A DNA stretch of 64,000 nt, taken from contig JASTWF010000048.1 of NCBI GenBank assembly GCA_030390025.1, forward strand, positions 1,736,001 to 1,800,000. The letters are read 5' to 3'. Positions 1,555 through 55,644 of this stretch are shown piece by piece. Under the pieces are notes generated by a model. It saw only the letters and a list, made by a program, of their open reading frames with translations, was not told the DNA's origin and did no database searches. Within the stretch, counting starts at the first letter, position 1, and every line of letters starts with the position of its first letter. Source of the stretch: Squalus acanthias. Taxonomy: Eukaryota. The position numbers were made by a program, and so were the translations under genes.

Positions 1555-1572
1555 GAGCGCCCTCTGCTGTCC
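1555..1572 (-). promoter_or_regulatory. CTCF-like site
   Basis: Minus strand GGACAGCAGAGGGCGCTC vs consensus GGCCASYAGRKGGCRSY. Confidence 0.7.
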
Positions 1573-1610
1573 TTGTGGAGAAACACAGCGTCAGTCGACA
1601 AAAAACCACC

Positions 1611-1822
1611 NNNNNNNNNNNNNNNNNNNNNNNNNNNNNNNNNNNNNNNNNNNNNNNNNNNNNNNNNNNNNNNNNNNNNNNNNNNNNNNNNNNNNNNNNN
1701 NNNNNNNNNNNNNNNNNNNNNNNNNNNNNNNNNNNNNNNNNNNNNNNNNNNNNNNNNNNNNNNNNNNNNNNNNNNNNNNNNNNNNNNNNNNNNNNNNNNN
1801 NNNNNNNNNNNNNNNNNNNNNN
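1611..1822. other. Assembly gap (others at 7019-7249, 9759-9895, 37624-37767)
   Basis: N runs, mostly at low-complexity tracts. Confidence 0.99.
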
Positions 1823-2162
1823 TCGTTCTATCTTTCTGTCTTTGTGCCTTTCTTTCTCTATCCTTTTCTTTTTATTTCTCTATCACTATATCATTCTTTC
1901 CTTCATTACTTATATATTTAATTCCCTCTTTCTACCTTTTTTACATTCCTTCTTTCCTTTCTTTCTTTTTGCTTTGATTATTTGAGTTTGTTTTGCTCAG
2001 CCCCAACTCCACCTATCACTGAAAGGCAGTGACCTCGGCGGACTGAATGTGCTCAACACTTCAGACAGGACAGGTTGATGTTGTGCCCGAGCAACATATC
2101 CTTCTATTGCTTTCTCATTCTTATGTTTATGTAGTTCCCCTTAAATGCATCTGTGCTACTCG

Positions 2163-3231
2163 AAGTAACTGGCTATCTCAAAGAAGGCAGCGGGTGGTGG
2201 TGGATGGAAAATTTTCGGATTGGAGACCAGTTACCAGCGGTGTGCCACAGGGGTCGGTGCTGGGTCCTCTGCTGTTGTGATTTTTATCAATGACTTGGAG
2301 GAGGGGACTGAAGGGTGGATCAGTAAATTTGCTGATGACACCAAGATTGGTGGAGTTGTGGATGAGGTGGAGGGCTGTTGTCGGCTGCAAAGAAACATTG
2401 ATAGGATGCAGAGCTGGGCCGAAAAATGGCAGATGGAATTTAACCCTGATAAGTGCGAGGTGATTCATTTTGGTAGGGCAAATTTGAATAAGGAGTACAG
2501 AGTCAACGGCAGGGTTCTAAGGTACGTGGAGGAACAGAGGGATCTGGGGGTTCATATCCACAGATCTCTGAAGGTTGCCACTCAAGTGGATAGAGCAGTA
2601 AAGAAGGCCTATAGTGTGTTAGCGTTTATTAACAAGGGGTTTGAGTTTAAGAACCGTGAGGATATACTGCAACTGTACAGGACCTTGGTGAGACCACATT
2701 TGGAATATTGTGTGCAGTTCTGGTCACCTCACTATAAGAAGGACGTGGAAGCATTGGAAAGAGTGCAAAGGAGATTTACCAGGATGCAGCCTGGTTTGGG
2801 AGGGAAGGTCATATGAGGAAGGATTGAGGGAGCTTATGCTTTAATCTTTAGAGCGGAGGAGGATGAGAGGCGACTTAATAGAGGTTTATAAGATGATGAG
2901 GGGGATAGATAGAGTGGATGTTCAGAGACTATTTCCTCGGGTGGATGTAGCTGTTACAAGTGGGCATAACTATAAGGTGCATGGGGGGAGATATAGAGGG
3001 GATGTCCGAGGTAGATTTTTTACTCAGAGAGTGGTTGGAGTGTGGAATGGACTGCCTGCTGTGATAGTGGAGTCGGACACTTTAGGAACTTTCAAGCGGT
3101 TATTGGATAAGCACATGGAGCACACCAGAATGATAGGGAGTGGGATAGCTTGATCTTGGTTTCGGACAATGCTCGGCACAACATCGAGGGCCGAAGGACC
3201 TGTACTGTGCTGTACTGTTCTATGTTCTATG
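2163..3231 (+). mobile_element. Young 5'-truncated CR1-like LINE (RT C-terminal half)
   Basis: [29 protein letters not shown] with two frameshifts; (TTCTATG)n tail; inserted in an older antisense LINE. Confidence 0.92.
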
Positions 3232-3452
3232 ACGCAAACATTCCCTGTTGTAGCGAGTTCAACGTTCTCGCCATTCTCTGAGTAAAGAAGTTTCTCCTGA
3301 ATTCCCTATTTTAATTTATCTTATATTTATGTCCCCGAGCTTTGGTCTTTCCCACATGTGGAAACATTTTCGATACATCGATCCTGTTGAAACCGTTTCA
3401 TAATTTTCGCTTTCAGCTTACCACTCAGTCTTCTCTTTTCTAGAGAAAGCAG

Positions 3453-3777
3453 CCTTCCCCGGGTATTGTCCGTGCCGGAACATGTTAGGGTTACCGATAG
3501 TCTTCACAGAGCATTTCAGTTCCACACGCTCCCGAGGTAATTTGAAGACAGCGGCGGGACTCTGGCGGATATTCTGCGAGCTCACATCTAGTATAGAGAC
3601 GGGGAGAGGAAGAGGTCAGTAAACAGGGACATTCGGGCATTGGGAAAAGTGAGCAAGAGCGAAAGAAAGAAAGTGACATAGAAAAAAAGTAAGTAAATTG
3701 TGATTGTTAGCAATAATTATTGTTATAAAAATTTTCTTAAGGTTAAACGTGTTCAGCAGTCCCAGTAACAGATAGTT
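3453..3777 (-). pseudogene. TRBV: 3'-truncated family 1 V pseudogene
   Basis: V exon 3587 to about 3453 stops after QYPGK; conserved Trp lost; leader lacks ATG and GT donor; no RSS. Confidence 0.8.
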
Positions 3778-3959
3778 ATTTTATTTCAATGTTTACTTCC
3801 AATGAGGGAATGAGCGAGAGCAGGAACTTTCACTGTTGCGAGGAGCCAAAGCGCGCTTTTCAAATCATTGAGAGAAACATGAAAAGCTTAAGGAAGCAAT
3901 AAAGGGATGGTTAGATCCCCTGTCTCCAGTTCAACCAATCGGAATCGACGTGTTTGCCA

Positions 3960-4375: not shown

Positions 4376-4812
4376 GAAACAAACTGCATTGAAAGGTAAA
4401 TGTGCGCTGATCAGAACTGGTCTCCAGACTCAGACAGTGGAGCAGGAGTGAGAGATACGCGGTCCCACAGCCCCGCACATCCATCACCCTCCGCCCCTCC
4501 TGATTCTTCCACAAATGCAAGGATTGGTTACTGGTTGCAGGGCGGGGAAGACGTATCACGTCAGACAACACGCCTCACCATCTTGTCCACAGCCATTTAA
4601 TGAGGGGAGGGGAGAGCAGGGAATATGGGATGCGAGGGGAAGGGGAGGAAGGAGTAGGAGAGAGTAGAGGAGAGGAGTGGAAGGATTGAAGGAGAAAGTA
4701 TGCACTGAACTAATATCTAGTGCTGCCACATGGTGGCGGAAATGGAGCACTGAACTCCCAGACGTCCGCTGCAGGTTTTTGTAGCGGGGAAGCCGCTTTC
4801 TCAAACGCTGTG

Positions 4813-8800: not shown

Positions 8801-8968
8801 AGCCGCAATGGGATTGAATGGCCTCCTCATGCTCCTGTGTAGCTGGTTCGAAGGTCAAACTACCTAATCCTGTTCCTATGCAATAGGCTCAAGGGTAATG
8901 AATGACCTCCTCTTATTCCTATGTTTCTATCAAAACATATTCAATCAACAGTGTGGTTCATGGTCCTA

Positions 8969-8986
8969 GAGCGCCCTCTGCTGTCC
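8969..8986 (-). promoter_or_regulatory. CTCF-like site
   Basis: GGACAGCAGAGGGCGCTC. Confidence 0.7.
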
Positions 8987-9387
8987 CTGTGGAGAATGAA
9001 AACACAGTCAGTGTGTAAAATCCACCAGTCTTCTACTTTATTTCCTTTTTTCTATCTTTCTATCCTTCTTTCTGCCATTCTTTCTGTCTTTCTTTCGTTC
9101 TGTCTTTCTTTCCTTCCTCGTTTTTTCTTGATATCTATCTCTTTTTTTATACCGATCTAACTTTCACTCTATCATTCTCTACTTTATCTAAGTTAATGTT
9201 TCTTTGCACCTTCTCCGGTGCCTGTATATCTAATCTCTCACTTTTCTTCTAATGCATATCAAAAACGCGTTCGCTCTGTAAAACAAAACACAGCGGGAGG
9301 AAGCAACGCGCGGTGTTATCTTATGCAGGTGTCTGTTGCCGCCTTTGGGGTTTTTGTTCTGCTCCTCCATCTCTCTGAGTCACTGTG

Positions 9388-10189: not shown

Positions 10190-11055
10190 AACAGACGGGA
10201 TCTGAATGTGGCAATGGGGACACAGACAGATTAAATGAATGAACAACACAGAGGTAGATGAAGTTTAATGTGGGCAAGTGTGAGATCATCCACTGCCAAA
10301 CTAAGAAAGAGTATCAGAAAATGTTCTAAATGGTGAAAAGCTGGGAACTGTGGAGGTGCAAAGGGATTTAGGTTTCAAACTACACAAATCGCTCTCGGCC
10401 AGTAGACAGATACAAAAATCAAAAAGGCTAATGGAATGTTGGCCTTTCTCTCAAGGGTGCTGGAATACAGAAGAGAGAAAGTTATGCTTCAGTTGTACAG
10501 AGACCTGGTCAGACTCCATCTGGAACAGGACGTTCATTTCTGGGTAACACACTTCAGGGAGGATATATTGGCCTTGGAGGGAGTGCAGCGAAGATTCACC
10601 AGAATGATCCCGGGGATTACAGGGTTTATTATGAGGACAAATTACATAGACTAGGCTTGTATTCCATTGAGAACAGAAGATTAAGCAGTGATCCTACTGA
10701 GGTGTTGAAAATGTTAAAAGTATTGGAGACTGTAGATAGAGAGAAGATATTCCCTCTGGTGAGGGGCAGCCCAGAACTAGGGGTCATCAGCTGAGCATTA
10801 AAGCGAGGCCGATCAAGGGTCATATCTGGAGGCCCCTCTCGAAACAAAGGATAATGAAAATCTGCAGTTCTCTCGCCCAAAATTGCTGGTGAGGCCAGAA
10901 GTCAACTGGAGATTTCAAAACTTAGATTTCTGTTATCTAAGGGTATGAAGGGGTAGGGAACCAATGAGGGTAAATGGAGTTATGATTCAGATCAAACAGG
11001 ATCTGATTGAACGGCGGAGCGGCTCGAAGGGCTGAATTGGCTCCTTCTGCTCCGA
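10190..11055 (+). mobile_element. Degraded CR1-like LINE 3' fragment
   Basis: MLAFLSRVLEYRREKVMLQLYRDLVR...LEGVQRRFTRMIPG remnants. Confidence 0.8.
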
Positions 11056-11095
11056 ATAAACCATGTTCCAGGCATTGGTGGGTTTCATGGTCCTA

Positions 11096-11113
11096 GAGCG
11101 CCCTCTGCTGTCC
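11096..11113 (-). promoter_or_regulatory. CTCF-like site
   Basis: GGACAGCAGAGGGCGCTC. Confidence 0.7.
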
Positions 11114-11930
11114 CTGTGGAGAATGAAAACACCGCGCCAGTGGACAAAGACAACACGTCATCAGTGAATGAAAACCCAAACATCGTTTTACTTTCTTTCT
11201 TTCATTCATTCATTATTGCTACTTTTACTTCGTTTTTGCATTTGTTAATATTCTATTTTTTGGGGTCTGAACCAGTTTCACCTCCCCCTGACTGCGCTGG
11301 CACTCTGCTAACTGAATGTGCTCAATAATTCAGCACAGGATGGGTTGATATTGTATACTATCAGCACTGCCTTCTATTCCTTTCTCCCTCATGTGCTTAT
11401 CCCGCATTCCCTTAACTGTATCTGCGCCTTTCGCCTCAACTACTCATTTTGGTAGCGAGATCTGCATCCTCCCCACTCTCTGGGTAAAAAAGATTCTGCT
11501 GAATCCCCTAATGGATTTATTAGTGACTATCTCATATATAAGGCCACTAGTTTTGATCGTCCATACAATTGAAAATATCTTATCTAAGTCTACCCTCTAG
11601 AATCCCTTCCAGAATTATAAAGACCTCTATCAGGTCATCCCTCGGTCTTCTCTTCTTTAGAGTAAAGAGCCCCAGCCTGTTCAGCCTTTCCTGATAGTTA
11701 TAACCTCTCACTTTTGGTGTCATCCTAGTAAATATTTATTTTCTCCTCCTCCAGTGCCTCTATATCTAATCACTCAATTCGATACAGACCCATCTCTTCT
11801 TGTCCAAAACACGTAAACTCTACAATATAAACATAACCGCTCGAGGCACAGCGCGGTTTCATCATCCACAGGTGTTTCCGGACGCCTTTGGGGTTTTTGT
11901 TGAGCTCCTCCATCTCTCTGAGTCACTGTG

Positions 11931-14305: not shown

Positions 14306-15195
14306 CTTTTACATGAAGTATATCCCTTAATAATGAAAGCTGCGAGAACAGGAGCGTGGAGTCTTGTGAGGAGCCAACCCGCTCTTTAAAAATCATTGAG
14401 GAACCCCTGAGCAGCGTCAGGAAGTGATGCAGAGTTGGACACGCCGCATCCAAGAGCGAACCAATCAGAATCGATGAGCTTTCTAATTACCAATGACGGA
14501 CTGGACCTTATGCCGTCAACATTCCCAACAATGGTGTCAATCGCTCGTTTATTGTTTGCTAATCAGAAATGAAATTATCCACGTCTGGAATCCCGATTAG
14601 CCACGTGTAGATTCCCAATTAGCCATACCTTGATTCCCAATTAGCCAAATGTGTGGCTAACACATGGACAACACTGGTCTACAGTAAGCCCTTTTGATAA
14701 CGTGAGGCAGTCGGTGCAACAATATCCGGGTCCCATCGGGCTGTTCATCAGTTCATCTCTTCTATTGCATGGTTGGGCCTATGACGATCAGGAGGCCACA
14801 AAGACTCGGCCTTGACTGGGGAACTTGCAAACGGCCCCACTGTACGCAGGCTGCAGTGAACCCGTTCCACATCAGAGATAACAGTCGCTGAGCTGGAACA
14901 TGAATGGTCACGGATATAGAGCTAAATCGAAGAGGAAATCATTTCCTAGGTCTCCTTAATGACCTTCATTATTGCAAATAAATGATATCAAGGGGTAAGA
15001 GGTAGAATTACAGATTAAAAGGATTAGCTGACGTAAGTGGATTAATGGCCTCCTCCCTTTCCTGTGTAAGAGGCTCGAGGGGCTGAATGGCCTCCTCCTG
15101 ATCCTGTGTAAGAAACTCATGGGGCTGAATGGCCTCCTCCTGCTCCTTTGTTCCGATTGAACCATGTTCCGAGCACTGGTGTGTTTCCTGGTCTA

Positions 15196-15213
15196 GAGCG
15201 CCCTCTACTGTCC
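15196..15213 (-). promoter_or_regulatory. CTCF-like site
   Basis: GGACAGTAGAGGGCGCTC. Confidence 0.7.
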
Positions 15214-15820
15214 CTGTGGCGAAAGAAAGCACAATGTCAGTGTATAAAAAGTACTTTTAATTTATTTCCCTCTTTCTACATTTCGTTCTACTTTTGGTTA
15301 ATATCGTTCTGCCTTTCTATCATTCTTTCCTTGTTTTCTCCACATTTATTTCCTTCTCTTTTTTCTCCCCTGCTTCCTTCCTGTCTTTTTCTTTATTTCG
15401 TTCTTCCATCATGTCTTCCTTTCTTTCAATCTTTCTTTATTTTTTTTCCTTTTTCTTCCCAGCTTACTTTCTTTCTTTTATAATTTCTATCTTCTTTACT
15501 TTCTATCTTTCTCTCCTTGGCCTAACCAATCAAACCCACTGATAATACTCCAAGACATGCGCCAGTCTGTTCAGAATTTCCTGATACTTTATAAACCTCT
15601 CAATTCTGGCATTATCTTTGTTAATCTTTCTTTGCACCTTCTCCAGTGCAGATATATATCTAATCTCTCACTTTAATTCTAACCCGTCAATTCTTCTTGT
15701 CAAAAGCATGTTCGCTCTGCCAAATAAACCCAACAGCACCGCGCGGTTTTATCTTAAACAGGTGTTTTCTGCCGCCTTTGGGGATTTTGTTGAGCTCCTC
15801 CATCTCTCTGAGTCACTGTG

Positions 15821-16206: not shown

Positions 16207-16292
<86 letters not shown>

Positions 16293-16382: not shown

Positions 16383-17088
16383 CTTTTACTTGAAGCGTTT
16401 CTCTTAATAATTGAAAGCAGCGAGAATAGGAGCGTGGAGTCTTGTGAGGAACCAACCCGCTCTTTAAAAATCATTGACGAAACCCTGAGCAGAGTGAGGG
16501 AGTGATGCAGAGTTGGTCACGCCCCTTCCTCCAGCGAACCAATCAGAATCGATGTGCTTGCTAATTACCAATGACTGACTGGACCTTATGCCGTTAACAT
16601 TCCCAACAACGGTGTCTGTCGCTCGTTTATTGTTCGCTAATCAGAAATGAAATTATCCACGTCTCTATTCCCGATTAGCCACATGTAGATTCCCAATTAG
16701 CCAAACCTTGATTCCCAATTAGCCACATGTGAATAGTGGCGAACACATGGACAACACTGGGCTAAAGTAAACCCTTTTGGTAACGTGTGGCCGTCGGTGC
16801 AACAATATCCGGGTCACAGCGGGCTGTTCATCTGTTCTATTGCATGGTTGGGTCTGTGACGATCAGGAGGACTCAAAGATTCGCCCTTGACTGGGGAACT
16901 TGCAAACGTCCCCACTGTATTCAGACTGCAGTGAACCCGTTCCACATTAGAGATAGCACTCGCTGAGCTGGAAGATGAATGGCCACGGATTTAGAGCTAA
17001 ATGGAAGAGGGGCTGAATGGCCTTCGCCCGTTCAAGTATCAGAGGCTCGGTGCGCTGAATAGCCGACTTCTGTTCCCGTGTTCCTATT

Positions 17089-17106
17089 GACCGCCCTCTA
17101 CTGTCC
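17089..17106 (-). promoter_or_regulatory. CTCF-like site (variant)
   Basis: GGACAGTAGAGGGCGGTC. Confidence 0.6.
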
Positions 17107-17715
17107 CTGTGGAGAAAGACAACACAATGTCTGTGTATAAAAAATAGTATTTTACTTACTTACCTTCTTTATATATTTCGTTCTATTTTTATTTCTATCT
17201 TTCTGCGTTTCTATCTTTCTTTCTTTTTTGTATTTTTCGTTCTATCCTTCTCCTTTTGTCTTTCTTGCTTCCTTACTTTCTTTCTTTCTTTCGTTCCCTC
17301 TTCCTTTATTTCTTTCTCTTTTTCTTCCTTTCTTTCTTTTATTTTTCCTATCTTCCTTTCTTTATATCTTTCTTCTGTACGCCTCCCCTAAAAAACAAAT
17401 TGTTAATCTTTAAGGACCTCTGTCATGTCACAACTCAGCCTTCTCTTCTCTGCAGTAAACAGTCCCAGCCTCTTCAGCCTGTCCTGATAGTTAGTACCTC
17501 TCAATTCTGATCTCATCCTTGTTAATCATTATTTCTACCTTCTCCAGTGCCTCTATAATTAATCTCTCACTTTTAATCTTCCTGTTGTCAAAATCACGTT
17601 CGCTCTGTAAAATAAACCCAACAGGACGCGGCACCGCGGGGTTTTACATTAAACAGTTGTTTCCTGCCGCCTTTGGGGTTTTTGTTGAGCTCCTCCATCT
17701 CTCTGAGTCACTATG

Positions 17716-18229: not shown

Positions 18230-19403
18230 CTTTTACTGGAAGCTTTTCTCTTAATAATGAAATGAGCGAGAACAGGAGAGTTGAGTCTTGTGAGGAGCCA
18301 ATCCGCTCTTTTCAAATCATTGAGGAAAACATGAAGAGCGTGAGGACGTGATGCAGGGTTGGACACGCCCCCTTCCTCCATCGAACCAAGCAGTATCTAT
18401 GTGCTTGCTAATTACCAATGACTGACTGGATCTTATGCCGTTCACATTCCCAGCAATGGTGCCCATTGCTCATTGTTTATTTACTAATCAGAAATGCATT
18501 AACGCACATCTGGATTCCCAGTCATCAACATCTGTATCCCAAGTTAGCCACATGTGACTAGTGGCGCACACATGAACAACACTCGTCTAAAGTAAGCCCT
18601 TCAGATAAGAAGAGGCAGTCGGTGCAACAATATCCGGGTCACATCGGGCTGCTTATCTGTTCTGCCATGTGGTTGGGCTCATTAATGGGCGTATGATGAC
18701 CAGGAGGAATCACAGACTCGCCCTTGACTGCGGAAATTGCAAACGGCCCCACTGTATTCCGATTGCCGTTAACCCGTTCCACATCAGAGATATTACTGGC
18801 TGAGCTGGAACGTGAATGGCCACGGATATAGAGCTAAATGGAACAGGGAATAATTTCCTAGGTGTGCTTAAAGACCCTCATTAATGCAAATAAAGTCCGG
18901 TTGTTGAGATATTATGTATTTTGAAAATAATCATATAATAGTGCAGCACAGAAGGAGGTCATTCGGCCCATGGAGTCTGCGCCGGATTTTTCGAAGAACA
19001 ATGCAGTTAGTCACACTCCGCCGCTCTTTCCCCATATCCCTGCAGTTTCGCTCCTACGAATATTTATCCAAGTCCCTTTTGAAATGTGGAACTCTCGCCC
19101 CCAAAATGCTGCGGATGCTGGGGGACAATTGGAGCACGCAAGGCTGAGTTGGATCGATTCATGTTGGGTTCGGATATCAAGGGATATGCAGCAAAGGCGG
19201 GTTAATGAGGTTGAATTACAGATTAAAAGGCAGAGCTGACGCAATGGAAGAATGGTCTCCTTTCAATTCCTATGTAAGAGGGACATGGGGCTGAAAGGCC
19301 TCCTCCTGTTCCTGTCTAACAGGCTCGAGGGGCTGAATGGCCTCCTCCTGTTCCTGTGATACGATTAAAACATGTTCCGGGCACTGGTGTGTTTCATGGT
19401 CTA

Positions 19404-19421
19404 GAGCACCCTCTACTGTCC
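19404..19421 (-). promoter_or_regulatory. CTCF-like site (variant, in V-less partial unit)
   Basis: GGACAGTAGAGGGTGCTC. Confidence 0.5.
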
Positions 19422-40757: not shown

Positions 40758-42150
40758 ATAGAGTCATAGATTCTAGAGTCATAGATTCATAACTGCACAG
40801 AAGGAGGCCATTCGGCCCACCGAGTCCGTGCCGACTCACTGTAGGGCAATCTAGTCAGTCCCATTCCCCCGCTCTATCCCCGTAGCCCTGCAAGTTTATT
40901 TCCCTCAAGTGCCTATCCAGTCTCCCCTTTAAAACACTGAGTGTCTCCGCTTCCACCACTTCCATCGGCAGCGAGTTCCAGGTCCTCACCGCTCGCTGCA
41001 TAAACAAGATTTTCCTCACGACCCCCATGTATCTCTTGCCCATAACCTTAAATCTCTGTCCCCCTAGTCCTTGTAACATCAACTAGTGGGAACAGCCTTT
41101 CCCCGTCTAGCCTATCCAAACCCGTCATAATCTTGTACACCTCTATCAAATCACCCCTCAACCTCCTTTGCTCTAATGTAAACAAATCCAGCTTCTCCAA
41201 CCTGCCCTTGTAGATAAGATCCCCATTCCCGGAACCATTCTGGTAAATCTCCTCTGCAACCTCTCAAGGGACTTCACATCCTTCCTAAAGTGTGGTGACC
41301 AGAACTGAACTCAATACTCCAGTTGTGGCCTAACCAGCGCTTTATAAAAGGTTCAGCATAACTTCCCTACTTTTGTACTCAATACCTCTTTTTATGAAGC
41401 CCAAGATCTCATATGCTTTGTTAACCACTCTCTCAATATGTCCTGCCACCTTCAGGGACCTATGCACATTAACCCCCAGGTCCCTCTGTCCCTGCACACT
41501 CTTTAAAACAGTGCCATTAAGTGTATATTGCCTCTCTCTGTTCCTTCTGCCAAAATGCATCACATCACACTTCTCCGAATTATATTCCATCTGCCACTTG
41601 TCTGCCCATTCTGCCAGCCTTTCTATGTCCTGTTACAGTCGATTGGTATCATCATCACTGTTTGCCACTCCCCTAAGTTTGGTGTCATCGGTAAATTTAG
41701 AAATTCTACTCTGTATTCTAATATCCAGGTCATTTACATATATCAGAAAAAGCAGTGGCGCCAGCAGTGACCCTTGGGGAACACCACTGTCTACCATCCT
41801 CCAGTCTGAAAAATAGCCATTTACCACAACTCGCTGTTTTCTGTCCTTACGCCAATTCCTTATCCAAGCTGCCACTGACCCACCTCTTCCACGAGCCTCA
41901 ATTTTGTTAACCAGCCTTCTATGTGGTACTTTGTCAATCGACTTCCGAATATCCATGTAGACAACATCCATTGCATTCCCTTCATCAATGGTCCCTCTTA
42001 CTTCATCAAAAAATTCAATTAGATTAGTCCAAATATGATCTGCCTTTTACAAATCCGTGTTGGCTCTCCTTAATTAGCTTTATCCTCTCCAAGTGCCCTT
42101 TAACTTTTTCCTTGATTATTGTTTCTAAAACTTTAACCACCACTGATGTT
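40758..42150 (-). mobile_element. CR1-like LINE, RT region, antisense
   Basis: DVVYMD..DKVPH, SGVPQGS, KFTDDTK and EYKSREVML in minus ORFs; short tandem tail at about 40758-40790. Confidence 0.88.
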
Positions 42151-42711
42151 AAACCATATTACAAGCAACTGTGATTTTCAGGGCCCGAGCGCGCACTCTT
42201 TTCTCTCTGCGGAGAAAGAAAACACAGGATCAGTGTGTAAAATCCCAACAGTCTTTTAACTACCTTACCTTCTTTCTAACTTTTTTTCCTTGTTTCTTAC
42301 ATTTTTTCTCCCCTTCTTTCTTTCTTACTTTCTTTCTTACTATCTGTCTTTCTTCTTTCTTTCTTCTTTCTTACATTCTGTATTTCTTTCCTTCTACCAT
42401 CCTTTCTTTTCTGCCTTGTTCCTTTCTTTGTGTCATTCTATCTTTCTATCTTCCTTTTTTTGTTCCATCTTCCCTTCGTTCTATCGTTCTTCACTGCATC
42501 TAACTTAATCTTACTTTGCAACTTTTCAAATGCCTTTTTTGTCTTTTTCTCACTTTTATTCTAACTGGTCTCTTGATCTTGTCAAAAACCCGTTCGCTCT
42601 GCATCAAATAAAATCAACAGGACTCAGCGCAGCGCGGTTTTATCTCAAACAGGTGTTTCCTGCCGCCTTTGGGGTTTTTGTTCAGCTCCTCCATCTCTCT
42701 GAGTCACTGTG

Positions 42712-43479: not shown

Positions 43480-44350
43480 TGGGAGCAGGAAGTTGCAAAG
43501 GTGACCGAAACAGATTATGTGAATGAGCAAAACATTGGCAGGTGGAGTTTAATGTGGGCAAGTCTGAGGTCAGCCACGGTAGGCGGAAGGAAGACAGATC
43601 AGAGTGTTTTGTAACTGGTGAGAAGCTCGGAACTGTGCAGGAGCAAAGGCAATTAGTTGTTTAGGGACACACATCACTAAAAGTCAGGATAGAGCTGCCA
43701 AAAGGAATCAAAATGTCTAATGGGTTGTTGGCCTTTATGTCAAGGAGGCTGGAATACAAAAGTGAGGAAGTTATGCCTCAGTTGTGCAGAGCCCCGGTCA
43801 GACTCTGGAACACAACTTTCAGTTCTGGGCACCGCACCTCATGAAGGATACATTGACCTTGGAAGGATGCAACATAGATTCGCCTGAACGATACCGGGGC
43901 TGAGAGGGTTAAATTATGGGGGCAGGTTGCAGACACCAGGCTTGTATTTCCTTGAGTATAGAAGATTGAGGGGTGAACTGATTTCGCTTTTCTTAATGTT
44001 GAAAGGAGATTATAGGATAGAGAGATGGAGACTGAGTCCTCTGGTGGGGGAGTCCAGGACAACGAGGCATAACCTTACAATTAGTGCTGGGGTTTCAGGC
44101 TTGAGATTTGGAAGCACTTCTTCACAAAAAGGGTCGTGGAAATCTTAACACTTTCCCACGAAAGGCAATGGATGCTGGGGGTCAATCGAAGATTTGAAGA
44201 CTGAGATTAATAGATTTCAGTCTAGTTAGGGTGTGGCTAGATATGGAGTAAAGGCAGGTAGGTGGAGTTAAGATACAGATCAGATATAATCTAGTTGAGT
44301 GGCGGAGCGGGCTCGAAGGGCTGAATGGTCTCCTCCTGTTCCTGCGTTCC
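43480..44350 (+). mobile_element. Degraded CR1-like fragment co-duplicated with V units (also 46205-47085, 50450-51340, 54695-55585)
   Basis: LEYRRLRGELI..PLVGESRT motif repeated in four units. Confidence 0.8.
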
Positions 44351-44392
44351 TATTAAACCATCTTCCAGGCACTGGCGTGTTTCGTGATTCAA

Positions 44393-44410
44393 GAGCGCCC
44401 TCTACTGCCC
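44393..44410 (-). promoter_or_regulatory. CTCF-like site
   Basis: GGGCAGTAGAGGGCGCTC. Confidence 0.7.
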
Positions 44411-45446
44411 GTGTGGAGAACATCAATGCAAAATCAGTGTATGAAAACCCAAGTCTTTTTATTTGCTCTCTTTTTATTTTTCCATTATTATTTCCTTCTT
44501 TTCTTTCTTTCTTTCCCTCGGTCTTTCATTTCTTCATTTCTTCCTGCTTCTTATCTTTCTTTTCCCATTTGTTATTTGAATTTGTTTTGCTCAGAACCAG
44601 TTTCAACCACACTTTAAACCCAGTGCCCTCTGCTGACTGAATATGCTCAACAGTTCACCACAGGTTGGGTTGATGTTGGACCCTATCTTTTATTTATGAA
44701 GCCTACTTTTGCACTTCCACACAACAACAACTTGTATATATATAGCGCCTTTAACGTAGTCAAACGTCCCTCGTCGCTTCACAGGAGAGTTAGAAGAGAA
44801 AAATTCGAGACTGAGCCACAGAAGAGGAAATTAGGGCAGGTGACCAAAAGCTTGGTCAACGAGGAGGGCTTTAGGGAGCGTCTTAAACGAGGAAAGAGAG
44901 GTAGAGAGGCGGAGTGGAGTCGGGAGGGAATTTCAGAGCTTAGGGCCTAGGCAACAGAAGGCACGGCCACCGATGGTTGAGCGATTATAATCAGGGATGT
45001 TCAAGAGGGCAGAATTAGAGGAGTGCAGATATCTCAGGGGGATTTGAGGCTGAATGAGATTACAGAGTTAGGGAGGGCCGAGGCCATGGAGGGATTTGAA
45101 CACAAGAATGAGAATTATAATATCGAGCCTTCCTTTCATCTTTCTTACTTTCTGTCTTTCTTTCTTTCCATCATCCTTTCTTTTCTGCATTGTTTCTCTC
45201 TTTGTATCGTTCTATCTTTCAATCTTCCATTCTTTCTTTCATTCTTTCTTTTCAACTTTTCCAATGCCTTTTTTGTCTTTTTCTCATTTTAATGCTAAGC
45301 CGTCACTTCATCTTGTCAAAAACCCGTTTCACTCTGCATAAAATAAACCGAACAAGACTCAGCGCAGCGCGGCTTTAACTCAAACAGGTGTTTCCTGCCG
45401 CCTTTGGGGTTTTTGTTGAGCTCCTCCATCTCTCTGAGTCACTGTG

Positions 45447-45956: not shown

Positions 45957-47124
45957 CTTTTACTTTAAGATTTACTTTTAAAAATAAAATCAGCGAAAAC
46001 AAGAGCGTTGAGTCTTGTGAGGATCCAACACGCTCTTTTCAACTCTTTCAGGAAAACATGAAGAGTGTGAGGAAGTGACGCAGGCCCCCCGCCCCTCTCT
46101 GACTGACATCACCGCCCCTCCCACGCCCACGCTGGCTCACAGCCCCGCCCCTCCCACGCTGATTGACAGTCCAGCCCCTCCCCCTCTGTTTGGCAGTAAG
46201 TGGAGCAGACGGAGCAGGAAGTTACAAAGTTGCCTTAAAGAGCTTACGTGAATGACAAAAAATCAGCGGCAGGTAGAGTGTAACGTGGGCAAGTATCAGG
46301 TCATATACTGGGGGCCTGAGGAAGAAACATCAGAGTGTTTTCTAACTGATGAGAAGCTGGAAACTGTCGAGGAGCAAAGAGATTTAGTTGGCCCGGTACA
46401 CAAATCACTAAAAGCCAGGGTAGAGGTGCAAAAAGGAATCAAACAGCTTAATGCAATGTTGCCCTTTATGTCAAGCAGGTTGTAATACAAATGTGAGGAA
46501 GCTATGCTTCGGTTGTACAGAGCCCCGGTCAGACTCTGGAAGACTACTTTCAAGTCTGGGCACCGCACCTCAGGAAGGATACATTGACCTTGGAAGGAGT
46601 GCAACATAGATTCACCTGAACGATACCGGGGCTGAGAGGGTTAAATTATGGGGGCAGGTTGCATACACCAGGCTTGTATTTCCTTGAGTATAGAAGATTG
46701 AGGGGTGAACTGATTTCACTTTTCTTAATGTTGAAAGGAGATTATGGGATAGAGAGATGGAGACTGATTCCTCTGGTGGGAGAGTCCAGAACAACGAGGC
46801 ATAACTTTACAATTAGTGCTAGGGTTTCAGTGGTGAGATTAGGAAGCACTTCTTCACATAAAGTGTACTGGAAATCTTAACACTCTCCCACAAAAGGCTG
46901 TGGATGATAGTGTTCAATCGAAGATTTGAAGACTGAGATTAACAGATTTCAGTCGGGTTGGGGTGTGGCGGGATATGGAGTAAAGGCAGGTAGGTGGAGT
47001 TAAGATACAGATCAGTTATAATCTAGTTGAGTGGCGGAGCCGCCTCGAAGGGCTGAATGGTCTCCTCCTGTTCCTGCGTTCCTATTAAACCATCTTCCAG
47101 GCACTGGCGTGTTTCGTGATTCAA

Positions 47125-47142
47125 GAGCGCCCTCTACTGCCC
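47125..47142 (-). promoter_or_regulatory. CTCF-like site
   Basis: GGGCAGTAGAGGGCGCTC. Confidence 0.7.
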
Positions 47143-47454
47143 GTGTGGAGAACATCAAAGCAAAATCAGTGTTTGAAAACCCAAGTCTTTTTATTTGCTC
47201 TCTTTTTATTTTTCCATTATTATTTCCTTCTTTTCTTTCTTTCTTTCATTCCCTCGGTCTTTCATTTCTTCATTTCTTCCTGCTTCTTATCTTTCTTTTC
47301 ACGTTTGTTATTTTAATTTGTTTTGCTCAGAACCAGTTTCAACCACACTTTAAACCCAGTTCCCTCTGCTGACTGAATGCGCTCAACACTTCACCACAGG
47401 TTGGGTTGATGTTGGACCCTATCTTTTATTTCTGAAGCCTACTTTTGCACTTCC

Positions 47455-49170: not shown

Positions 49171-49699
49171 ACTGGATGACCTCCATCTATTCCATATTAA
49201 ATCATATTACAAGCAAACGTGGGTTTCATGGTCCTAGAGCTCCCGCTGTAGTCTCTGTGGAGAAAGAACACACAGTGTCAGTGTGTAAAAGCCCGAAAGT
49301 CTTTTTACTTCATTTCCTTCATTTTTTCTTTCTTTCCTTGTTTCTTACATTTTTTCTTCATGTCTTTCTTCCTTCCTTTCTGTCTTTCTTCTTTCTTACA
49401 TCTTTCTTACTTTCTGTATTCTTTCTTTCTTTCCATCATCCTTTCTTTTCTGCATTGTTTCTCTCTTTGTATCGTTCTATCTTTCAATCTTCCATTCTTT
49501 CTTTTCAACTTTTCCAATGCCTTTTTTGTCTTTTTCTCATTTTAATGCTAAGCCGTCACTTCATCTTGTCAAAAACCCGTTCACTCTGCATAAAATAAAC
49601 CCAACAGGACTCGGCGCAGCGCGGTTTTAACACAAGCAGGTGTTTCCTGCCGCCTTTGGGGGTTTTTGTTGCGCTCCTCCATCTCTCTGAGTCACTGTG

Positions 49700-50206: not shown

Positions 50207-51379
50207 CTTTTACTTTAAGATTTACTTTTAAAATGAAATAGCGAAAACAAGAGCGTTGAGTCTTGTGAGGATCCAAGCCGCTCTTTTCAACTCTTTCAGG
50301 AAAACATGAAGAGTGTGAGGAAGTGATGCAGCCCCCCGCCCATCTCGGACTGACATCACCGCCCCTCCACACCCACGCTGGCTCACAGCCCCGCCCCTCC
50401 CACGCTGATTGACAGTCCAGCCCCTCCCTCTCTGTTTGGCAGTAAGTAGAGCAGACGGGAGCAGGAAGTTGCAAAGTTGCCCTAAACAGCTTATGTGAAT
50501 GACAAAAAAACAGCGGCAGGTAGAGTTTAACGTGGAACGTGGGCAAGTATGAGGTCATCCACTGGGGGCCTGAGGAAGAAACATCGGAGTGTTTTCTAAC
50601 TGATGAGAAGCTGGAAACTGTCGAGGAGCAAAGAGATTTAGTTGGCCAGGTACACAAATCACTAAAAGCCAGGATAGAGGTGCAAAAAGGAATCAAGGAG
50701 ATTAATGGAATGTAGGCCTTTATGTCAAGGAGGCTGGAATACAAAAGGGAGCAAGTTATGCTTCGGTTGTAACAGAGCCCCGGTCAGACTCTGGAACACT
50801 ACTTTCAGTTCCGGGCACCGCACCTCATGAAGGATACATTGATCTTGGAAGGAGTGCAAAATAGATTCACCTGAACGATACCGGGGCTGAGAGGGTTAAT
50901 TTATGGGGGCAGGTTGCATGCACCAGGCTTGTATTTCCTTGAGTATAGAAGATTGAGGGGTGAACTGATTTCACTTTTCTTAATGTTGAAAGGAGATAAT
51001 GGGATAGAGAGATGGAGACTGATTCCTCTGGTGGGAGAGTCCAGAACAACGAGGCATAACTTTACAATTAGTGCTAGGGTTTCAGTGTTGAGATTAGGAA
51101 GCACTTCTTCACATAAAGTGTACTGGAAATCTTAACACTCTCCCACAAAAGGCTGTGGATGATAAGGTTCAATCGAAGATTTGAAGACTGAGATTAACAG
51201 ATTTCAGTCGGGTTGGGGTGTGGCGGGATATGGAGTAACGGCAGATAGGTGGAGTTAAGATACAGATCAGATATAATCTAGTTGAGTGGTGGAGCGGGCT
51301 CGAAGGGCTGAATTGTCTCCTCCTGTTCCTGCGTTCCTATTAAACCATGTTTCAGGCACTGGCGTGTTTCGTGATCCAA

Positions 51380-51397
51380 AAGCGCCCTCTACTGCCC
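51380..51397 (-). promoter_or_regulatory. CTCF-like site
   Basis: GGGCAGTAGAGGGCGCTT. Confidence 0.7.
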
Positions 51398-52949
51398 GTG
51401 TGGAGAACATCAATGCAAAATCAGTGTATGAAAACCCAAGTCTTTTTATTTGCTCTCAATTCTTTTTCCATTATTATTTCCTTCTTTTCTTTCTTTCTTT
51501 CCCTCGGTCTTTCATTTCTTCATTTCTTCCTGCTTCTTGTCTTTCTTTTCCCATTTGTTATTTCAATTTGTTTTGCTCAGAACCAGTTTCAAACACCCTT
51601 TAAACACAGTGCCCTCTGCTGACTGAAAGCGCTCAACACTTCACCACAGGTTGGGTTGATGTTGGACCCTATCTTTTATTTCTGAAGCCTACTTTTGCAC
51701 TTCCACACTACAACAACAACAACTTGTATATGTGTAGCGCCTTTAAAGTAGTCAAACGTCCCTCGGCGCTTCACAGGTGAGTTAGAAGAGAAAAATTCGA
51801 GGCTGAACCACAGAAGAAGAAATTAGGGCAGGTGACCAAAAGCTTGCTCAAAGAGGAGGGTTTTGGGAGCGTCTTAAACGAGGAGAGAGAGGTAGAGAGG
51901 CGGAGTGGAGTAGGGAGGGAATTCCACAGCTTAGGGCCCAGGCAACTGAAGGCACGGCCACCAATGGTTGAGCGATTATAATCAGGGATGCTCAAGAGGG
52001 CAGAATTAGAGGAGCGCAGATATCTCAGGGGGACTTGAGGCTGAATGAGGTTACAGAGATAGGGAGGGGCGAGGCCTTGGAGGGATTTGAACACAAGAAT
52101 GAGAATTATAATATCGAGCCTTTGATTAACCGGGAGCCAATGTTAGGACACGGGCAGCAGAGTTTTGGATGACCTCAAGTTTACGTTGGGTAGAACGTAG
52201 GATGCCAGCCTGAAGTGCTTTGGAATCGTCCAGTCAACAGGTAACACCGGCATGGATGAGGGTTTCAGCAGCAGATGAGTGGAGGCAAGGGCGGTTGACG
52301 GGCGATGTTACGGAGGTGAAATTAAGTGGTCTAAGTGATGGCACGGAAAAGTGCCCGGAAGCTCATTTCGGGGTAAAATATGACACCAAGGTTGCGAACA
52401 GTTGGTTCGGCATCAGACAGATGCTATGGAAGGGATGGAGTCATTGGCTAGGGAACAGAGTTTGTGGCGGGGACCAAAGACAATGGCTTCAGTCTTCCCA
52501 ATATTTAATTGGAGAAAATTTCATCTCATCCAGCACTGCAAAATGGAAATATCTTCTCTACCTCTGACCTATCGAACCCCTTTCAGAATGTTCGCCTATC
52601 CTACGTTGAATATAGAAGATTCAGTGCTGAACTGATTGAGTTTTGTAAATGTAAAAATCCGTTGATACGGTAGATAGAGAAAAATTATTTCCTCTGTTGG
52701 GGGAGACCAGAACAGGGGGGGCTTAACCTTAAAATAGGATTAGATCGTTCAGGCGTTGTGTCAAAAACTACCTCTTCACACAATGGTTTTGGAAATATGG
52801 AACCGTTGAAGCAGAGGGTCAATGGGAGCTTTCAAGACTGAGATTGCTGGATATTTGTAAGCTTATTAAGGAATATGAAGCAATTGCGATTAAATACAAT
52901 GAAGATACACGTCAACCATGATCTAATTGGCTGACGGAGCAGACATGAA

Positions 52950-53420
52950 AAGCTGAATGGCCTCCTCTTCTTCCTATGTAACAGGCTCGAGGGGCTGAAT
53001 GGCCTTCTCCTGTTCCTATGTAACAGGTTCGAACAACTACATGGCCTCCTCCTGTTCGTATATAACAAGTTCGAGTGGCTGAATGGGCCTCTTCCTGTTC
53101 CTGTGTAACAGGCTCGAGGGGCTGCATGGCTTCCTCCTGATCCTGTGTACCAGGCTCGAGGGGCTGAATGGCCTTCTCCTGTTCCTGTGTAAAAGACTCG
53201 AGGGGCTGAATGGCCTCCTCCTATTCCTGTGTAACAGACTCGAGGGGCTGAATGGCCTCCTCCTGATCCTCTGCAACAGGCTCGAGGGGCCGGATGGCCA
53301 CCTTCTGTTCGTATGTAACAGGCTCGAGTGGCTGAATGATCCTACTCCTGTACCTGTGTACACGGTCCTAAGGGGGCTTAATCGCCTTCTCCTGTTCCTA
53401 TGTAACAGGCTGACCTGGAC
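52950..53420 (+). repeat. 42-bp LINE-tail minisatellite
   Basis: About 11 tandem units. Confidence 0.9.
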
Positions 53421-53484
53421 TGGATGACCTCCATCTATTCCATATTAAATCATATTACAAGCAAACGTGGGTATCATGTCCCTA

Positions 53485-53502
53485 GAGCGCCCTCTGTAGT
53501 CT
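53485..53502 (-). promoter_or_regulatory. CTCF-like site (variant)
   Basis: AGACTACAGAGGGCGCTC. Confidence 0.5.
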
Positions 53503-53941
53503 CTGTGGAGAAAGAACACACAGTGTCACTGTGTAAAAGCCCGAAAGTCTTTTTACTTCATTTCCTTCATTTTTTCTTTCTTTCCTTGTTTCTTACATTT
53601 TTTCTTCCTGTCTTTCTTCCTTCATTTCTGTCTTTCTTCTTTCTTTCATCTTTCTTCTTTCTGTCTTTCTTTCTTTCCATCATCCTTTCTTTTCCGCATT
53701 GTTTCTCTCTTTGTATCGTTTCATCTTTCAATCTTCCATTCTTTCTTTTCAACTTTTCCAATGCCTTTTCTGTCTTTTTCTCATTTAATGCTAAGCCGTC
53801 ACTTCATCTTGTCAAAAACCCGTTCACTCTGCATAAAATAAACCGAACAGGACTCAGCGCAGCGCGGCTTTAACTCAAACAGGTGTTTCCTGCCGCCTTT
53901 GGGGTTTTTGTTGAGCTCCTCCATCTCTCTGAGTCACTGTG

Positions 53942-54451
53942 AAGACTCCAGGCGCAGTAATACACGTCCGAGTGATTCGCCTGCAGGCTGGAGGACTTCA
54001 GGTTGAACTCGTTGCCATTCGGTCGCTCGGCGGTGAAACCGTCCACCGTCCCCTCTGTAGTCACGCTTTGAACAACTAGGGAGTAAAACATCAACTGCGG
54101 CCCTTTCCGCGGGTCCTGTCTGTACCAGTACATGGAACCGCTATCGACACCCTCCACTTCGCACTTTAGTTCGACTCCCTCCCCAGTAAATTTGGAGACA
54201 GCGGCGGGAATCTGGCGGACAGTCTCTGAGTTCACGTCTGAGAAAGAGACAGGGAGAGGAGGAGATTAGTATCCAGGGGCATTCTGGGTTGTGGAGAAAC
54301 AAAGAAGTAAAGAACCAGAGAAAGAGAGAATGTAGGAAACAACGATGGAAAGAAAGAAAGGAAATAGTAAAGAAAGGTTATTGACAAAGATTACTGTGTG
54401 AACCAATCACTTACATTGAAATAAGATCATGAGACTCAGTAACAGATACAT
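53942..54451 (-). CDS. TRBV: Family 1 V, apparently functional
   Basis: Leader 54415-54451; V exon 53942-54237 open; consensus 23-RSS 53903-53941. Confidence 0.9.
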
Positions 54452-55626
54452 CTTTTACTTTAAGATTTACTTTTAAAAATAAAATCAGCGAAAACAAGAG
54501 CGTTGAGTCTTGTGAGGATCCAACACGCTCTTTTCAACTCTTTCAGGAAAACATGAAGAGTGTGAGGAAGGGACGCAGCCCCCCGCCCCTCTCTGACTGA
54601 CATCACCGCCCCTCCACGCCCACGCTGGCTCACAGCCCTGCCCCTCCCACGCTGATTGACAGTCCAGCCCCTCCCTCTCTGTTTGGCAGTAAGTAGAGCA
54701 GACGGGAGCAGGAAGTTGCAAGGTTGACCTAAACAGCTGAAGTCAATGAGAAAAAATCAACGACAGGCAGCGTTTAACGTGGAACGTGGGCAAGTATGAG
54801 GTCATCCACTGGGGGGCCTGAGGAAGAAACATCAGAGTGTTTTCTAACTGATGAGAAGCTGGAAACTGTCGAGGAGCAAAGAGATTTAGTTGGCCAGGTA
54901 CACAAATCACTAAAAGCCAGGGTAGAGGTGCAAAAAGGAATCAAACAGCTTAATGCAATGTTGCCCTTTATGTCAAGCAGGTTGTAATACAAAAGGGAGG
55001 AAGTTATGCTTCGGTTGTACAGAGCCCCGGTCAGACTCTGGAAGACTACTTTCAAGTCTGGGCATCGCACTTCTGGAAGGATACATTGACCTTGGAAGGA
55101 GTGCAACATAGATTCACCTGAACGATACCGGGGCTGAGAGGGTTAAATTACGGGGGCAGGTTGCATACACCAGGCTTGTATTTCCTTGAGTATAGAAGAT
55201 TGAGGGGTGAACTGATTTCGCTTTTCTTAATGTTGAATGGAGATTATAGGATAGAGAGATGGAGACTGATTCCTCTGGTGGGGGAGCCCAGAACAACGAG
55301 GCATAACTTTACAATTAGTGCTAGGGTTTCAGTGGTGAGATTAGGAAGCACTTCTTCACATAAAGTGTACTGGAAATCTTAACACTCTCCCACAAAAGGC
55401 TGTGGATGATAAGGTTCAATCGAAGATTTGAAGACTGAGATTAATAGATTTCAGACGGGTTGGGGTGTGGCGGGATATGGAGTAAAGGCAGGTAGGTGAA
55501 GTTAAGATACAGATCAGATATAATCTAGTTGAGTGGTGGAGCGGGCTCGAAGGGCTGAATGGTCTCCTCCTGTTCCTGCGTTCCTATTAAACCATCTTCC
55601 AGGCACTGGCGTGTTTCGTGATCCAA

Positions 55627-55644
55627 GAGCGCCCTCTACTGCCA
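55627..55644 (-). promoter_or_regulatory. CTCF-like site
   Basis: TGGCAGTAGAGGGCGCTC. Confidence 0.7.

What the first reader, a model, noticed from the sequence alone, without database searches (positions are those of the whole stretch)
1555..55644. Uniformly oriented CTCF-like site beyond the RSS of almost every V: candidate loop-extrusion architecture in a cartilaginous-fish TCR locus
Seen: about 18 recognisable copies of GGACAG[C/T]AG[A/G]GGGCGCTC, plus decayed copies at about 42187 and 49237. All are on the minus strand, in a conserved block of about 70 bp that lies 0.26-1.0 kb past the nonamer of every family 1 V that keeps an RSS. The block survives although the TE content around it differs between units. 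Established: the motif matches the CTCF core (JASPAR MA0139), and in mouse Igh, V-associated forward CTCF elements impede cohesin extrusion and promote RAG access. Inference: the duplicating unit is promoter + V + RSS + oriented CTCF element pointing in the direction of V transcription (towards D-J-C if joining is deletional). That would push this control logic back to the origin of jawed vertebrates. I do not know of a description of this in sharks.
Basis: partly seen in the sequence, partly recalled or inferred. Interest (0 to 1): 0.85.

Follow-up and report, generated by a model that had tools for sequence, protein, structure and literature searches.

The report
CTCF-like site behind each shark V
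Almost every V gene segment in this shark-like T-cell-receptor array is followed by a same-direction DNA motif that looks like a binding site for the genome-folding protein CTCF, as in mouse receptor loci, but sequence alone gives only modest evidence that the site is used.

Summary
The 18-mer has 16 matches (≤2 mismatches; 0.01 expected). A profile finds 20 copies of a ~110-bp block, all on the minus strand. All 15 family-1 V segments that keep a 23-RSS are also on the minus strand and have a block 261-997 bp past the nonamer.

The core fits the published CTCF consensus with one mismatch in 13 of 20 copies.

Uniform orientation follows from tandem duplication alone. The core plus 10 bp on its 5' side changes at about 0.6-0.7 times the rate of flanking or spacer DNA (p 0.003-0.04). 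The core alone against the spacer gives p=0.14, and the RSS is far more constrained. Three pseudogene Vs keep good sites; two intact Vs have only decayed ones.

The block abuts a transposon in 19 of 20 copies. Three transposon 5' ends elsewhere in the window lack it. A genome-wide copy count and cross-species comparison could not be made.

First readers noted similar sites in other windows of this genome; those notes are unchecked. No paper on sharks turned up.

The parts
1493..1607 (-). block copy, core exact (1555-1572); N gap begins 4 bp upstream
8908..9023 (-). block copy, core exact; 362 bp past the nonamer of V with heptamer at 9387
11042..11150 (-). block copy, core exact; 778 bp past the nonamer of V 11930
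15135..15251 (-). block copy, core exact; 568 bp past the nonamer of V 15820
17046..17146 (-). block copy, 1 mismatch, with a deletion between core and transposon; follows pseudogene V 17715
19343..19460 (-). extra block copy without its own V (CpG changed to TpG in the core)
20029..20146 (-). block copy, core exact; follows pseudogene V 20746
24032..24150 (-). block copy, core exact (GGGGGCGC variant); 565 bp past the nonamer of V 24715
26751..26867 (-). block copy, core exact; closest to its RSS (261 bp past the nonamer of V 27129)
28441..28559 (-). block copy, core exact; follows pseudogene V 29158
31130..31227 (-). decayed block copy; the only block after intact V 32058
33940..34051 (-). 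block copy, 1 mismatch to the 18-mer; follows V 34869
36580..36696 (-). block copy, 1 mismatch to the 18-mer; follows V 37284
42147..42246 (-). heavily decayed block copy, the only one not followed by the transposon; the only block after intact V 42711
44331..44450 (-). block copy (subfamily B); 997 bp past the nonamer of V 45446, about 0.92 kb upstream of the next V promoter repeat
47063..47182 (-). block copy (subfamily B), second block after V 49699
49193..49293 (-). decayed block copy, first block after V 49699
51318..51437 (-). block copy (subfamily B), second block after V 53941
53442..53541 (-). moderately decayed block copy, first block after V 53941
55565..55684 (-). block copy (subfamily B), downstream of a partial V unit at about 56.9-57.4 kb
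44622..44636 (-). second CTCF-like site (TCAGCAGAGGGCACT), about 230 bp 5' of the subfamily B block; sister copies at 51608-51622 and 55859-55873 (1 mismatch each) and 47358-47372 (2 mismatches)
4722..4736 (-). CTCF-like 15-mer (1 mismatch, at a fixed G) about 37 bp past the nonamer of a family-2 V; its homologue at 58071-58085 has 2 mismatches

Best explanation
Each V-beta-like unit of this tandem array carries, between its 23-RSS and the promoter of the next V, a roughly 70-bp host-derived block. The core of the block is a CTCF-binding element that reads 5'->3' on the V sense strand.

Shown here: the motif, its strand, its place in the unit, its inheritance by segmental duplication, and a mild excess of conservation.

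Inferred: CTCF binds it in thymocytes. The co-oriented sites then slow cohesin loop extrusion and anchor contacts with oppositely oriented sites near D-J-C. That brings V segments to the recombination centre, as described for mouse Tcrb and Igh.

Where a unit holds two blocks, one can decay.
For: - The 15-mer consensus with up to 1 mismatch gives 17 hits, all 17 on the V strand, against 0.33 expected. Thirteen of them are main-block copies.
- 15 of 15 RSS-bearing family-1 Vs have a block 261-997 bp downstream.
- In pairwise identity, the best-conserved non-coding 15-column window of the unit is the 3' half of the core: 0.878, top of 481 windows, against a spacer mean of 0.753.
- On a tree built from the flanks, the core plus 10 bp on its 5' side shows 1.17 changes per site against 1.92 in the flanks (p=0.003). 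The 12-bp 3' half shows 0.83 (p=0.003).
- Within the core, the seven fixed consensus positions took 7 changes and the seven degenerate positions took 11 (read from the per-column output).
- The core CpG is kept in 18 of 20 copies. Non-coding CpGs beyond the first ~50 bp after the nonamer are kept in 4-11 of 15 units or 6-12 of about 20 blocks; two CpGs close to the RSS are kept in 15 of 15.
- In the two units where the first block has decayed (V 49699 and V 53941), a good second block lies downstream.
- Three transposon 5' ends outside V units lack the block (with no profile hit there).
- Cartilaginous fish have CTCF-orientation-biased TAD boundaries scored with the same motif model (PMC10115646, passages).
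- In mouse Tcrb and Igh, all V-region CTCF sites point towards D-J-C (PMC5859386; PMC10772921).
Against: - Orientation and copy number are fully explained by tandem duplication of one ancestral unit.
- Core19 against the post-RSS spacer is not significant (1.16 vs 1.50 changes per site, p=0.14). It ranks 59 of 477 windows by ML site rate, and a spacer patch near reference position 24550 is at least as conserved.
- The RSS is far more constrained (0.28 changes per site).
- The strongest between-subfamily conservation is in TTCTCCACAG just 5' of the core (0.96, against 0.84 for the core). That stretch is outside the CTCF motif.
- All 3 pseudogene Vs keep a site with at most 1 mismatch. Only 8 of 12 intact Vs do, and intact V 32058 and V 42711 have only decayed sites.
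- The first consensus C is A, G or T in every main-block copy.
- There are no binding, methylation, Hi-C or cross-species data.
- D-J-C is not in the window.
Confidence: 0.45

Rival explanations
1. Neutral passenger. One chance CTCF-like sequence sat in the ancestral V unit and was copied with it. Its apparent conservation reflects shared ancestry, local rate variation or gene conversion spreading out from the RSS region, not use by CTCF.
For: - All 20 copies lie in homologous unit context, with homologous upstream microsatellite and flank.
- Core19 against the spacer gives p=0.14. Other spacer windows are equally or more conserved in tree-aware measures.
- 4 of 20 copies are decayed, two of them behind intact Vs with no replacement.
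- Pseudogene Vs keep perfect sites.
Against: - There is a local conservation peak over the core and its 5' flank, between a poorly conserved microsatellite and the transposon.
- The 29 bp against the flanks gives p=0.003, and against the spacer p=0.04.
- The core CpG is kept in 18 of 20 copies.
- Changes fall more on the degenerate positions of the motif than on the fixed ones (11 against 7).
- Two further CTCF-like sites in other sequence contexts lie on the same strand: the second site in subfamily B units and the family-2 V site.
Confidence: 0.3
2. Transposon-borne element. The block is the end of a repeat family spread through the genome. It could be a 5' extension of the abutting 42-bp-repeat transposon, or the 3' end of a plus-strand retroelement whose tail is the adjacent (CTTT)n run. 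On this reading its link with V genes is an accident of one insertion. It might still bind CTCF, as SINE-borne sites do in mammals.
For: - 19 of 20 copies abut the same transposon 5' end at the same junction.
- Read on the plus strand, the block lies directly before a (CTTT)n microsatellite, as a retroelement 3' end would.
- One block (19343-19460) occurs with the transposon but without a V.
Against: - Three transposon 5' ends outside V units (about 38.9, 40.7 and 61.2 kb) have no block upstream.
- The canonical transposon start seen at about 61.19 kb begins only some 35 bp after the core.
- No block copy lies outside V-unit context in the window.
- No Rfam family, including tRNA-type SINE heads, matches a block plus its flank.
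- The test is weak, because only about 13 kb of the window is not V-unit DNA.
Confidence: 0.12
3. A different functional element. The conserved TTTCTTTCTCCACAG|G is a 3' splice site of a non-coding exon of germline V-region transcripts, or the 29-mer binds another zinc-finger protein. On this reading the likeness to CTCF is incidental.
For: - The 10 bp 5' of the core are the most conserved part between subfamilies (0.96).
- They form a pyrimidine tract followed by CAG|G.
Against: - No conserved open frame follows: two of three frames hit a stop within 10 codons (read from the sequence).
- No good donor site follows.
- The pyrimidine tract may be the edge of the neighbouring microsatellite.
- No RNA data could be laid.
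Confidence: 0.08

Closest known systems
V-interspersed CTCF-binding elements of mouse Tcrb
   Same: It is the same kind of locus (V segments with 23-RSS, beta-like by recalled sequence features). [quoted passage not shown] In mouse there are 18 CBEs, all convergent to the CBEs that flank D-beta/J-beta (PMC10772921, passages; PMC5859386, Table 2 and text).
   Different: [quoted passage not shown] Here there is about one site per V every 2-5 kb, at 0.26-1.0 kb past the RSS. In 7 units it also lies about 0.9-1.15 kb upstream of the next promoter repeat. Binding is shown in mouse and is unknown here.
RSS-associated and upstream/intergenic CTCF sites of mouse and human Igh
   Same: The orientation bias with respect to V transcription is striking (>98% in mouse). 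The sites are inherited with V families, and the core written in that paper (GACCAGCAGGGGGC) is nearly the same as the shark GGACAGCAGGGGGC variant (PMC6746451, passages).
   Different: [quoted passage not shown] Here the distance is 261-997 bp and variable, and conservation is far below that of the RSS. In mouse families 7183 and Q52, functional members have the site and non-functional ones typically do not. No such link is seen here. That paper covered mammals only: mouse, human, chimpanzee and rabbit.
CTCF-oriented TAD boundaries of the little skate
   Same: They show that the vertebrate CTCF motif model and the orientation code apply in a cartilaginous fish (PMC10115646, passages; bioRxiv 10.64898/2026.10.19.759930, passage).
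   Different: Those are megabase-scale domain boundaries in fin tissue. Antigen-receptor loci do not appear in the passages I saw.

Membership tests
V-associated CTCF-binding elements of antigen-receptor loci | Sequence match to the CTCF core consensus | tested here: met
   Up to 1 mismatch to CCASYAGRKGGCRSY gives 17 hits against 0.33 expected. 13 of the 20 block copies are among them, and 3 more have 2 mismatches. The consensus was seen in PMC6746451. No position-weight-matrix scan (MA0139) was run, because no matrix was at hand.
V-associated CTCF-binding elements of antigen-receptor loci | One orientation throughout the V array, the same as V transcription | tested here: met
   17 of 17 hits, 20 of 20 blocks and all V segments are on the minus strand. 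Tandem duplication predicts this without any function.
V-associated CTCF-binding elements of antigen-receptor loci | Sites point towards D-J-C, and oppositely oriented sites flank the recombination centre | not testable with these tools
   There is no D, J or C in the window. No plus-strand hit has 1 mismatch or fewer.
V-associated CTCF-binding elements of antigen-receptor loci | CTCF and cohesin occupancy in developing lymphocytes | not testable with these tools
V-associated CTCF-binding elements of antigen-receptor loci | Core conserved above neighbouring duplicated DNA | tested here: inconclusive
   By pairwise identity it is the top window of 481. The 29 bp against the flanks gives p=0.003 and against the spacer p=0.04. 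Core19 against the spacer gives p=0.14, and its ML-rate rank is 59 of 477.
RSS-associated subclass of Igh CTCF sites | Fixed distance of about 17-19 bp (or 48 bp in human) from the nonamer | tested here: not met
   The main block lies 261-997 bp from the nonamer. Only the weak family-2 sites, about 37 bp past the nonamer, resemble this class, and both have mismatches at fixed positions.
Transposon-borne CTCF sites | The motif lies inside the consensus of a dispersed repeat | tested here: inconclusive
   In the window, 3 of 3 transposon 5' ends outside V units lack the block. No genome-wide count was possible.

The most novel reading that the evidence does not exclude
A grid of one co-oriented CTCF site per V, spaced every few kilobases, is a working part of shark antigen-receptor loci. 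Unchecked first-reader notes report it in several other loci of this genome as well. If so, cohesin/CTCF loop extrusion was already used to present V segments to the RAG recombination centre in the common ancestor of jawed vertebrates.
Probability: 0.35. Interest if true: 0.8.

Novelty: new member of a known kind. Interest (0 to 1): 0.55.

Why it matters
Co-oriented CTCF sites among V segments are a central part of current models of V(D)J recombination in mouse and human. In the papers I read, their conservation had been followed only within mammals. Loop extrusion with a CTCF orientation code is documented in a skate. Three searches found no paper that joins CTCF with shark or cartilaginous-fish antigen-receptor loci.

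If these sites bind CTCF, the link between genome folding and antigen-receptor assembly dates to the origin of jawed vertebrates. This dense, regular array would also be a simple natural system for relating site quality to V usage. If they do not bind, the case warns that a tandem array can mimic an 'oriented architecture'.

Tried and rejected
Genome-wide copy number and cross-species conservation by reads. The look-up of sequencing runs listed 5 runs of the source organism (share of words 0.42-0.53) and 5 runs of five other coded organisms (0.04-0.10).

Host DNA in metagenomes. The block pattern and a transposon 25-mer used as a calibrator both found nothing, so the collection holds no usable shark DNA.

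Rfam on one block plus its flank: no match.

Earlier findings searched by sequence: blank, which means nothing here.

Ideas rejected:
- The block as an RSS-like relic. Heptamer- and nonamer-like runs upstream of the core do not keep 12- or 23-bp spacing (read).
- A TATA-type promoter. The TTTATA run is not conserved between subfamilies.
- An upstream CTCF module. As I recall that module, the positions where it would lie hold a pyrimidine run instead; this rests on recall and was not tested.
- The second site in subfamily B units as fully independent evidence. Its context is ancestral to the C and D subfamily units, where the motif's 3' half is degenerate.

I did not run a matrix scan with MA0139.

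Supplements were closed. Tables S1 and S3 of PMC6746451 and the supplementary figures of PMC10115646 might refine the comparison of distances and motif scores.

Full report
WHAT IS THERE. Eight matches are exact, six have one mismatch and two have two. All are on the minus strand, and 0.01 are expected from shuffles. A profile built from those 16 finds 20 full-length copies of a block of about 110 bp (E 4e-16 to 7e-38). It also finds two weak partial hits. Everything is on the minus strand. The four extra copies, near 31180, 42190, 49240 and 53490, are decayed to different degrees.

THE V SEGMENTS. The window is a tandem array of V segments, all on the minus strand. Fifteen 'family-1' Vs have a 23-bp-spacer RSS: 13 with heptamer CACAGTG, one with CATAGTG and one with CAAAGTG. 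There are also two family-2 Vs, one family-3 V and several V fragments. The V exon is an immunoglobulin V-type domain. It matches PDB V domains down to E=2e-31, and the single database relative is a bamboo-shark protein carrying PF07686. Calling it beta-like rests on my recall of TRBV features and on other readers' unchecked notes. All 15 RSS-bearing family-1 Vs have a block 261-997 bp beyond the nonamer.

ASSEMBLY GAPS. None of the four N runs lies in a block or between an RSS and its block. One gap (1611-1822) starts 4 bp upstream of the first block, so that copy's upstream context is unknown.

ANATOMY OF THE UNIT. Read on the V strand, a unit runs in this order:
- promoter repeat, leader, intron with an (AAGA)n run, V exon and 23-RSS;
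- a well-conserved 27 bp, then about 250 bp of spacer;
- a GAAA-rich microsatellite;
- the block;
- the 5' end of a transposon whose first 42 bp are often expanded into an array of 2.6-10.9 units;
- transposon remnants and then the next promoter.

In seven units the block lies 0.91-1.15 kb upstream of the next V's promoter repeat (coordinates). The block could therefore be counted equally with the V before it or the V after it. Units between 45 and 57 kb carry two blocks. The first is a decayed one just after the V, and the second is a good one further on. One block (19343-19460) is a local duplicate without a V.

IS IT CTCF-LIKE? The consensus CCASYAGRKGGCRS is quoted in PMC6746451 (passage). 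With a final Y added and one mismatch allowed, it hits 17 times against 0.33 expected, and all 17 hits are on the V strand. Thirteen hits are main-block copies, and their single mismatch is always the first C. Three hits are a second site about 230 bp 5' of the subfamily B blocks. One hit lies about 37 bp past the nonamer of a family-2 V, with its mismatch at a fixed G.

The second site sits in a context that is ancestral to several subfamilies, but it is CTCF-like only in subfamily B. The family-2 homologue has two mismatches. These two add a little to the case that such motifs gather on the V strand, but they are weak evidence. I did not run a matrix scan.

IS IT PART OF A TRANSPOSON? Nineteen of 20 copies are followed at the same junction by the same transposon 5' end. 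Three 5' ends of that transposon family outside V units (about 38.9, 40.7 and 61.2 kb) have no block before them. The clean copy at about 61.19 kb shows that the element starts roughly 35 bp after the core. The block is therefore not part of that element's canonical end, and the insertion predates the expansion of the V family.

Read on the plus strand, the block lies directly before a (CTTT)n run, as the 3' end of a retroelement would. I cannot exclude that origin. Only about 13 kb of the window lies outside V units, so the in-window test is weak. The genome-wide test failed for lack of tools.

IS THE CORE CONSERVED MORE THAN ITS SURROUNDINGS? I ran four measures; the last item below adds two smaller observations.
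- Pairwise identity over 15 aligned units: RSS 0.965, 27 bp after the RSS 0.892, V exon 0.827, core 0.828, spacer 0.753, block flanks 0.735-0.748, transposon 0.645. The best 15-column non-coding window of 481 is the 3' half of the core, at 0.878.
- Parsimony changes per site on a tree of the 15 units: RSS 0.28, 10 bp 5' of the core 0.90, core19 1.16, V exon 1.18, spacer 1.50. Core19 against the spacer gives p=0.14. Core plus the 10 bp gives p=0.04.
- On 20 blocks, with the tree built from the flanks only: core plus 10 bp shows 1.17 against 1.92 in the flanks (p=0.003). The 12-bp 3' half shows 0.83 (p=0.003) and the 5' half 1.86.
- ML site rates: core19 ranks 59 of 477 non-coding windows, and the 29-bp window ranks 8 of 467. 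A spacer patch near reference position 24550 does as well or better.
- Two further observations. Between subfamily consensus sequences, the most conserved piece is TTCTCCACAG just 5' of the core (0.96), ahead of the core (0.84) and the 36 bp after it (0.77). The core CpG is kept in 18 of 20 copies. Non-coding CpGs beyond the first ~50 bp after the nonamer are kept in 4-11 of 15 units or 6-12 of about 20 blocks; two CpGs close to the RSS are kept in 15 of 15.

Taken together, there is a real local peak of conservation over a 29-bp stretch that includes the motif. Its rate is roughly 0.6-0.7 of neighbouring DNA. That is nothing like the constraint on the RSS, and the peak is not confined to the CTCF core.

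DOES SITE QUALITY FOLLOW V QUALITY? Twelve of the 15 V exons are open. Three (17715, 20746, 29158) are pseudogenes. All three pseudogenes keep a site with at most 1 mismatch. Eight of the 12 intact Vs have such a site in their downstream interval, two more have a 2-mismatch site, and V 32058 and V 42711 have only decayed copies. This gives no support for V-by-V selection, though a locus-level role would not require it.

COMPARISON WITH WHAT IS KNOWN.
[quoted passage not shown] Conservation was followed in mouse, human, chimpanzee and rabbit (PMC6746451, passages).
- The shark block fails the fixed-distance feature of the RSS-associated class. It resembles the intergenic/upstream class.
- Skate TAD boundaries carry orientation-biased CTCF motifs scored with MA0139.1 (PMC10115646, passages). 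[quoted passage not shown]
- Three full-text searches that joined CTCF with shark, cartilaginous fish or elasmobranch and antigen-receptor terms found nothing on the subject. In one search only 15 of the 23 papers were listed. PMC10322711, on TCR-alpha evolution including a shark, does not mention CTCF.

EARLIER NOTES OF THIS SCAN. First readers recorded similar co-oriented CTCF-like sites next to V segments in neighbouring windows and on other pieces of this genome. Some notes describe RSS-proximal sites in another V family and sites that flip with V orientation. These are unchecked titles from readers without tools. They are leads, not support. The only part I could test is the family-2 site in this window, and it is weak.

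VERDICT. The pattern is real and matches the known mammalian arrangement in motif, strand and placement among V segments. Function is plausible: I put it at about 0.45, or about 0.35 for the full loop-extrusion reading. It is not shown. Duplication explains the uniformity, and the conservation signal is modest. The finding is a new member of a known kind if confirmed, and it needs binding data and a genome-wide copy count.

Noticed in passing
window, 27 bp after each family-1 nonamer, e.g. 24650-24676 (minus strand): A module directly after the nonamer (CCAAAGGCGGCAGGAAACACCTG) is better conserved than the CTCF-like core: identity 0.892 and 0.74 changes per site. Its E-box CANNTG is kept in 15 of 15 units, with variation only in the two middle bases (CACCTG 12, CAACTG 1, CATCTG 1, CAGCTG 1). 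It is a possible E-protein site next to the RSS.
   Followed up: partly
window, 10 bp 5' of each core, e.g. 24112-24121 (minus strand): TTCTCCACAG, a pyrimidine tract ending in CAG|G, is the most conserved piece of the block between subfamilies (0.96). It looks like a 3' splice site. No RNA data could be laid to test this.
   Followed up: partly
window, RSS of family-1 Vs, e.g. 24677-24715: The 23-bp spacer is almost invariant across units that differ by about 25% in neighbouring spacer DNA. 33 of the 39 RSS columns never change in 15 units.
   Followed up: no
window, about 45-55 bp past the nonamer, e.g. around 24625-24640: A CpG cluster (CCGCGCGG type) is kept in most units, and its central CpG in 15 of 15. 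A further spacer patch near reference position 24530-24565 has the lowest tree-aware rates of the non-coding unit. Neither is explained.
   Followed up: no
window 15044-15151, 19850-20046, 23730-24048, 30719-31029, 33565-33832, 36361-36595, 48703-49163, 52952-53411: The first 42 bp of the transposon that abuts the block are expanded into tandem arrays of 2.6 to 10.9 units, and the copy number differs between V units.
   Followed up: partly
window 9759-9895 and 37624-37767: Two assembly gaps fall in leader introns, at the place where other units hold an (AAGA)n microsatellite (for example 25069-25182, 16193-16292, 57101-57184). The gaps probably mark unresolved simple repeats. This is inference only; the letters were not looked up.
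   Followed up: no
window 4722-4736 and 58071-58085 (minus strand): Both family-2 Vs carry a degenerate CTCF-like 15-mer about 37 bp past the nonamer. The second V also has a degenerate heptamer (CAAAGCG). Other readers' unchecked notes describe intact sites at 20-37 bp in a 'family C' elsewhere in this locus.
   Followed up: partly
window 45110-44760 (minus strand reading): A SINE-like insertion between the microsatellite and the second CTCF-like site explains the long distance (997 bp) from the RSS of V 45446 to its block.
   Followed up: no
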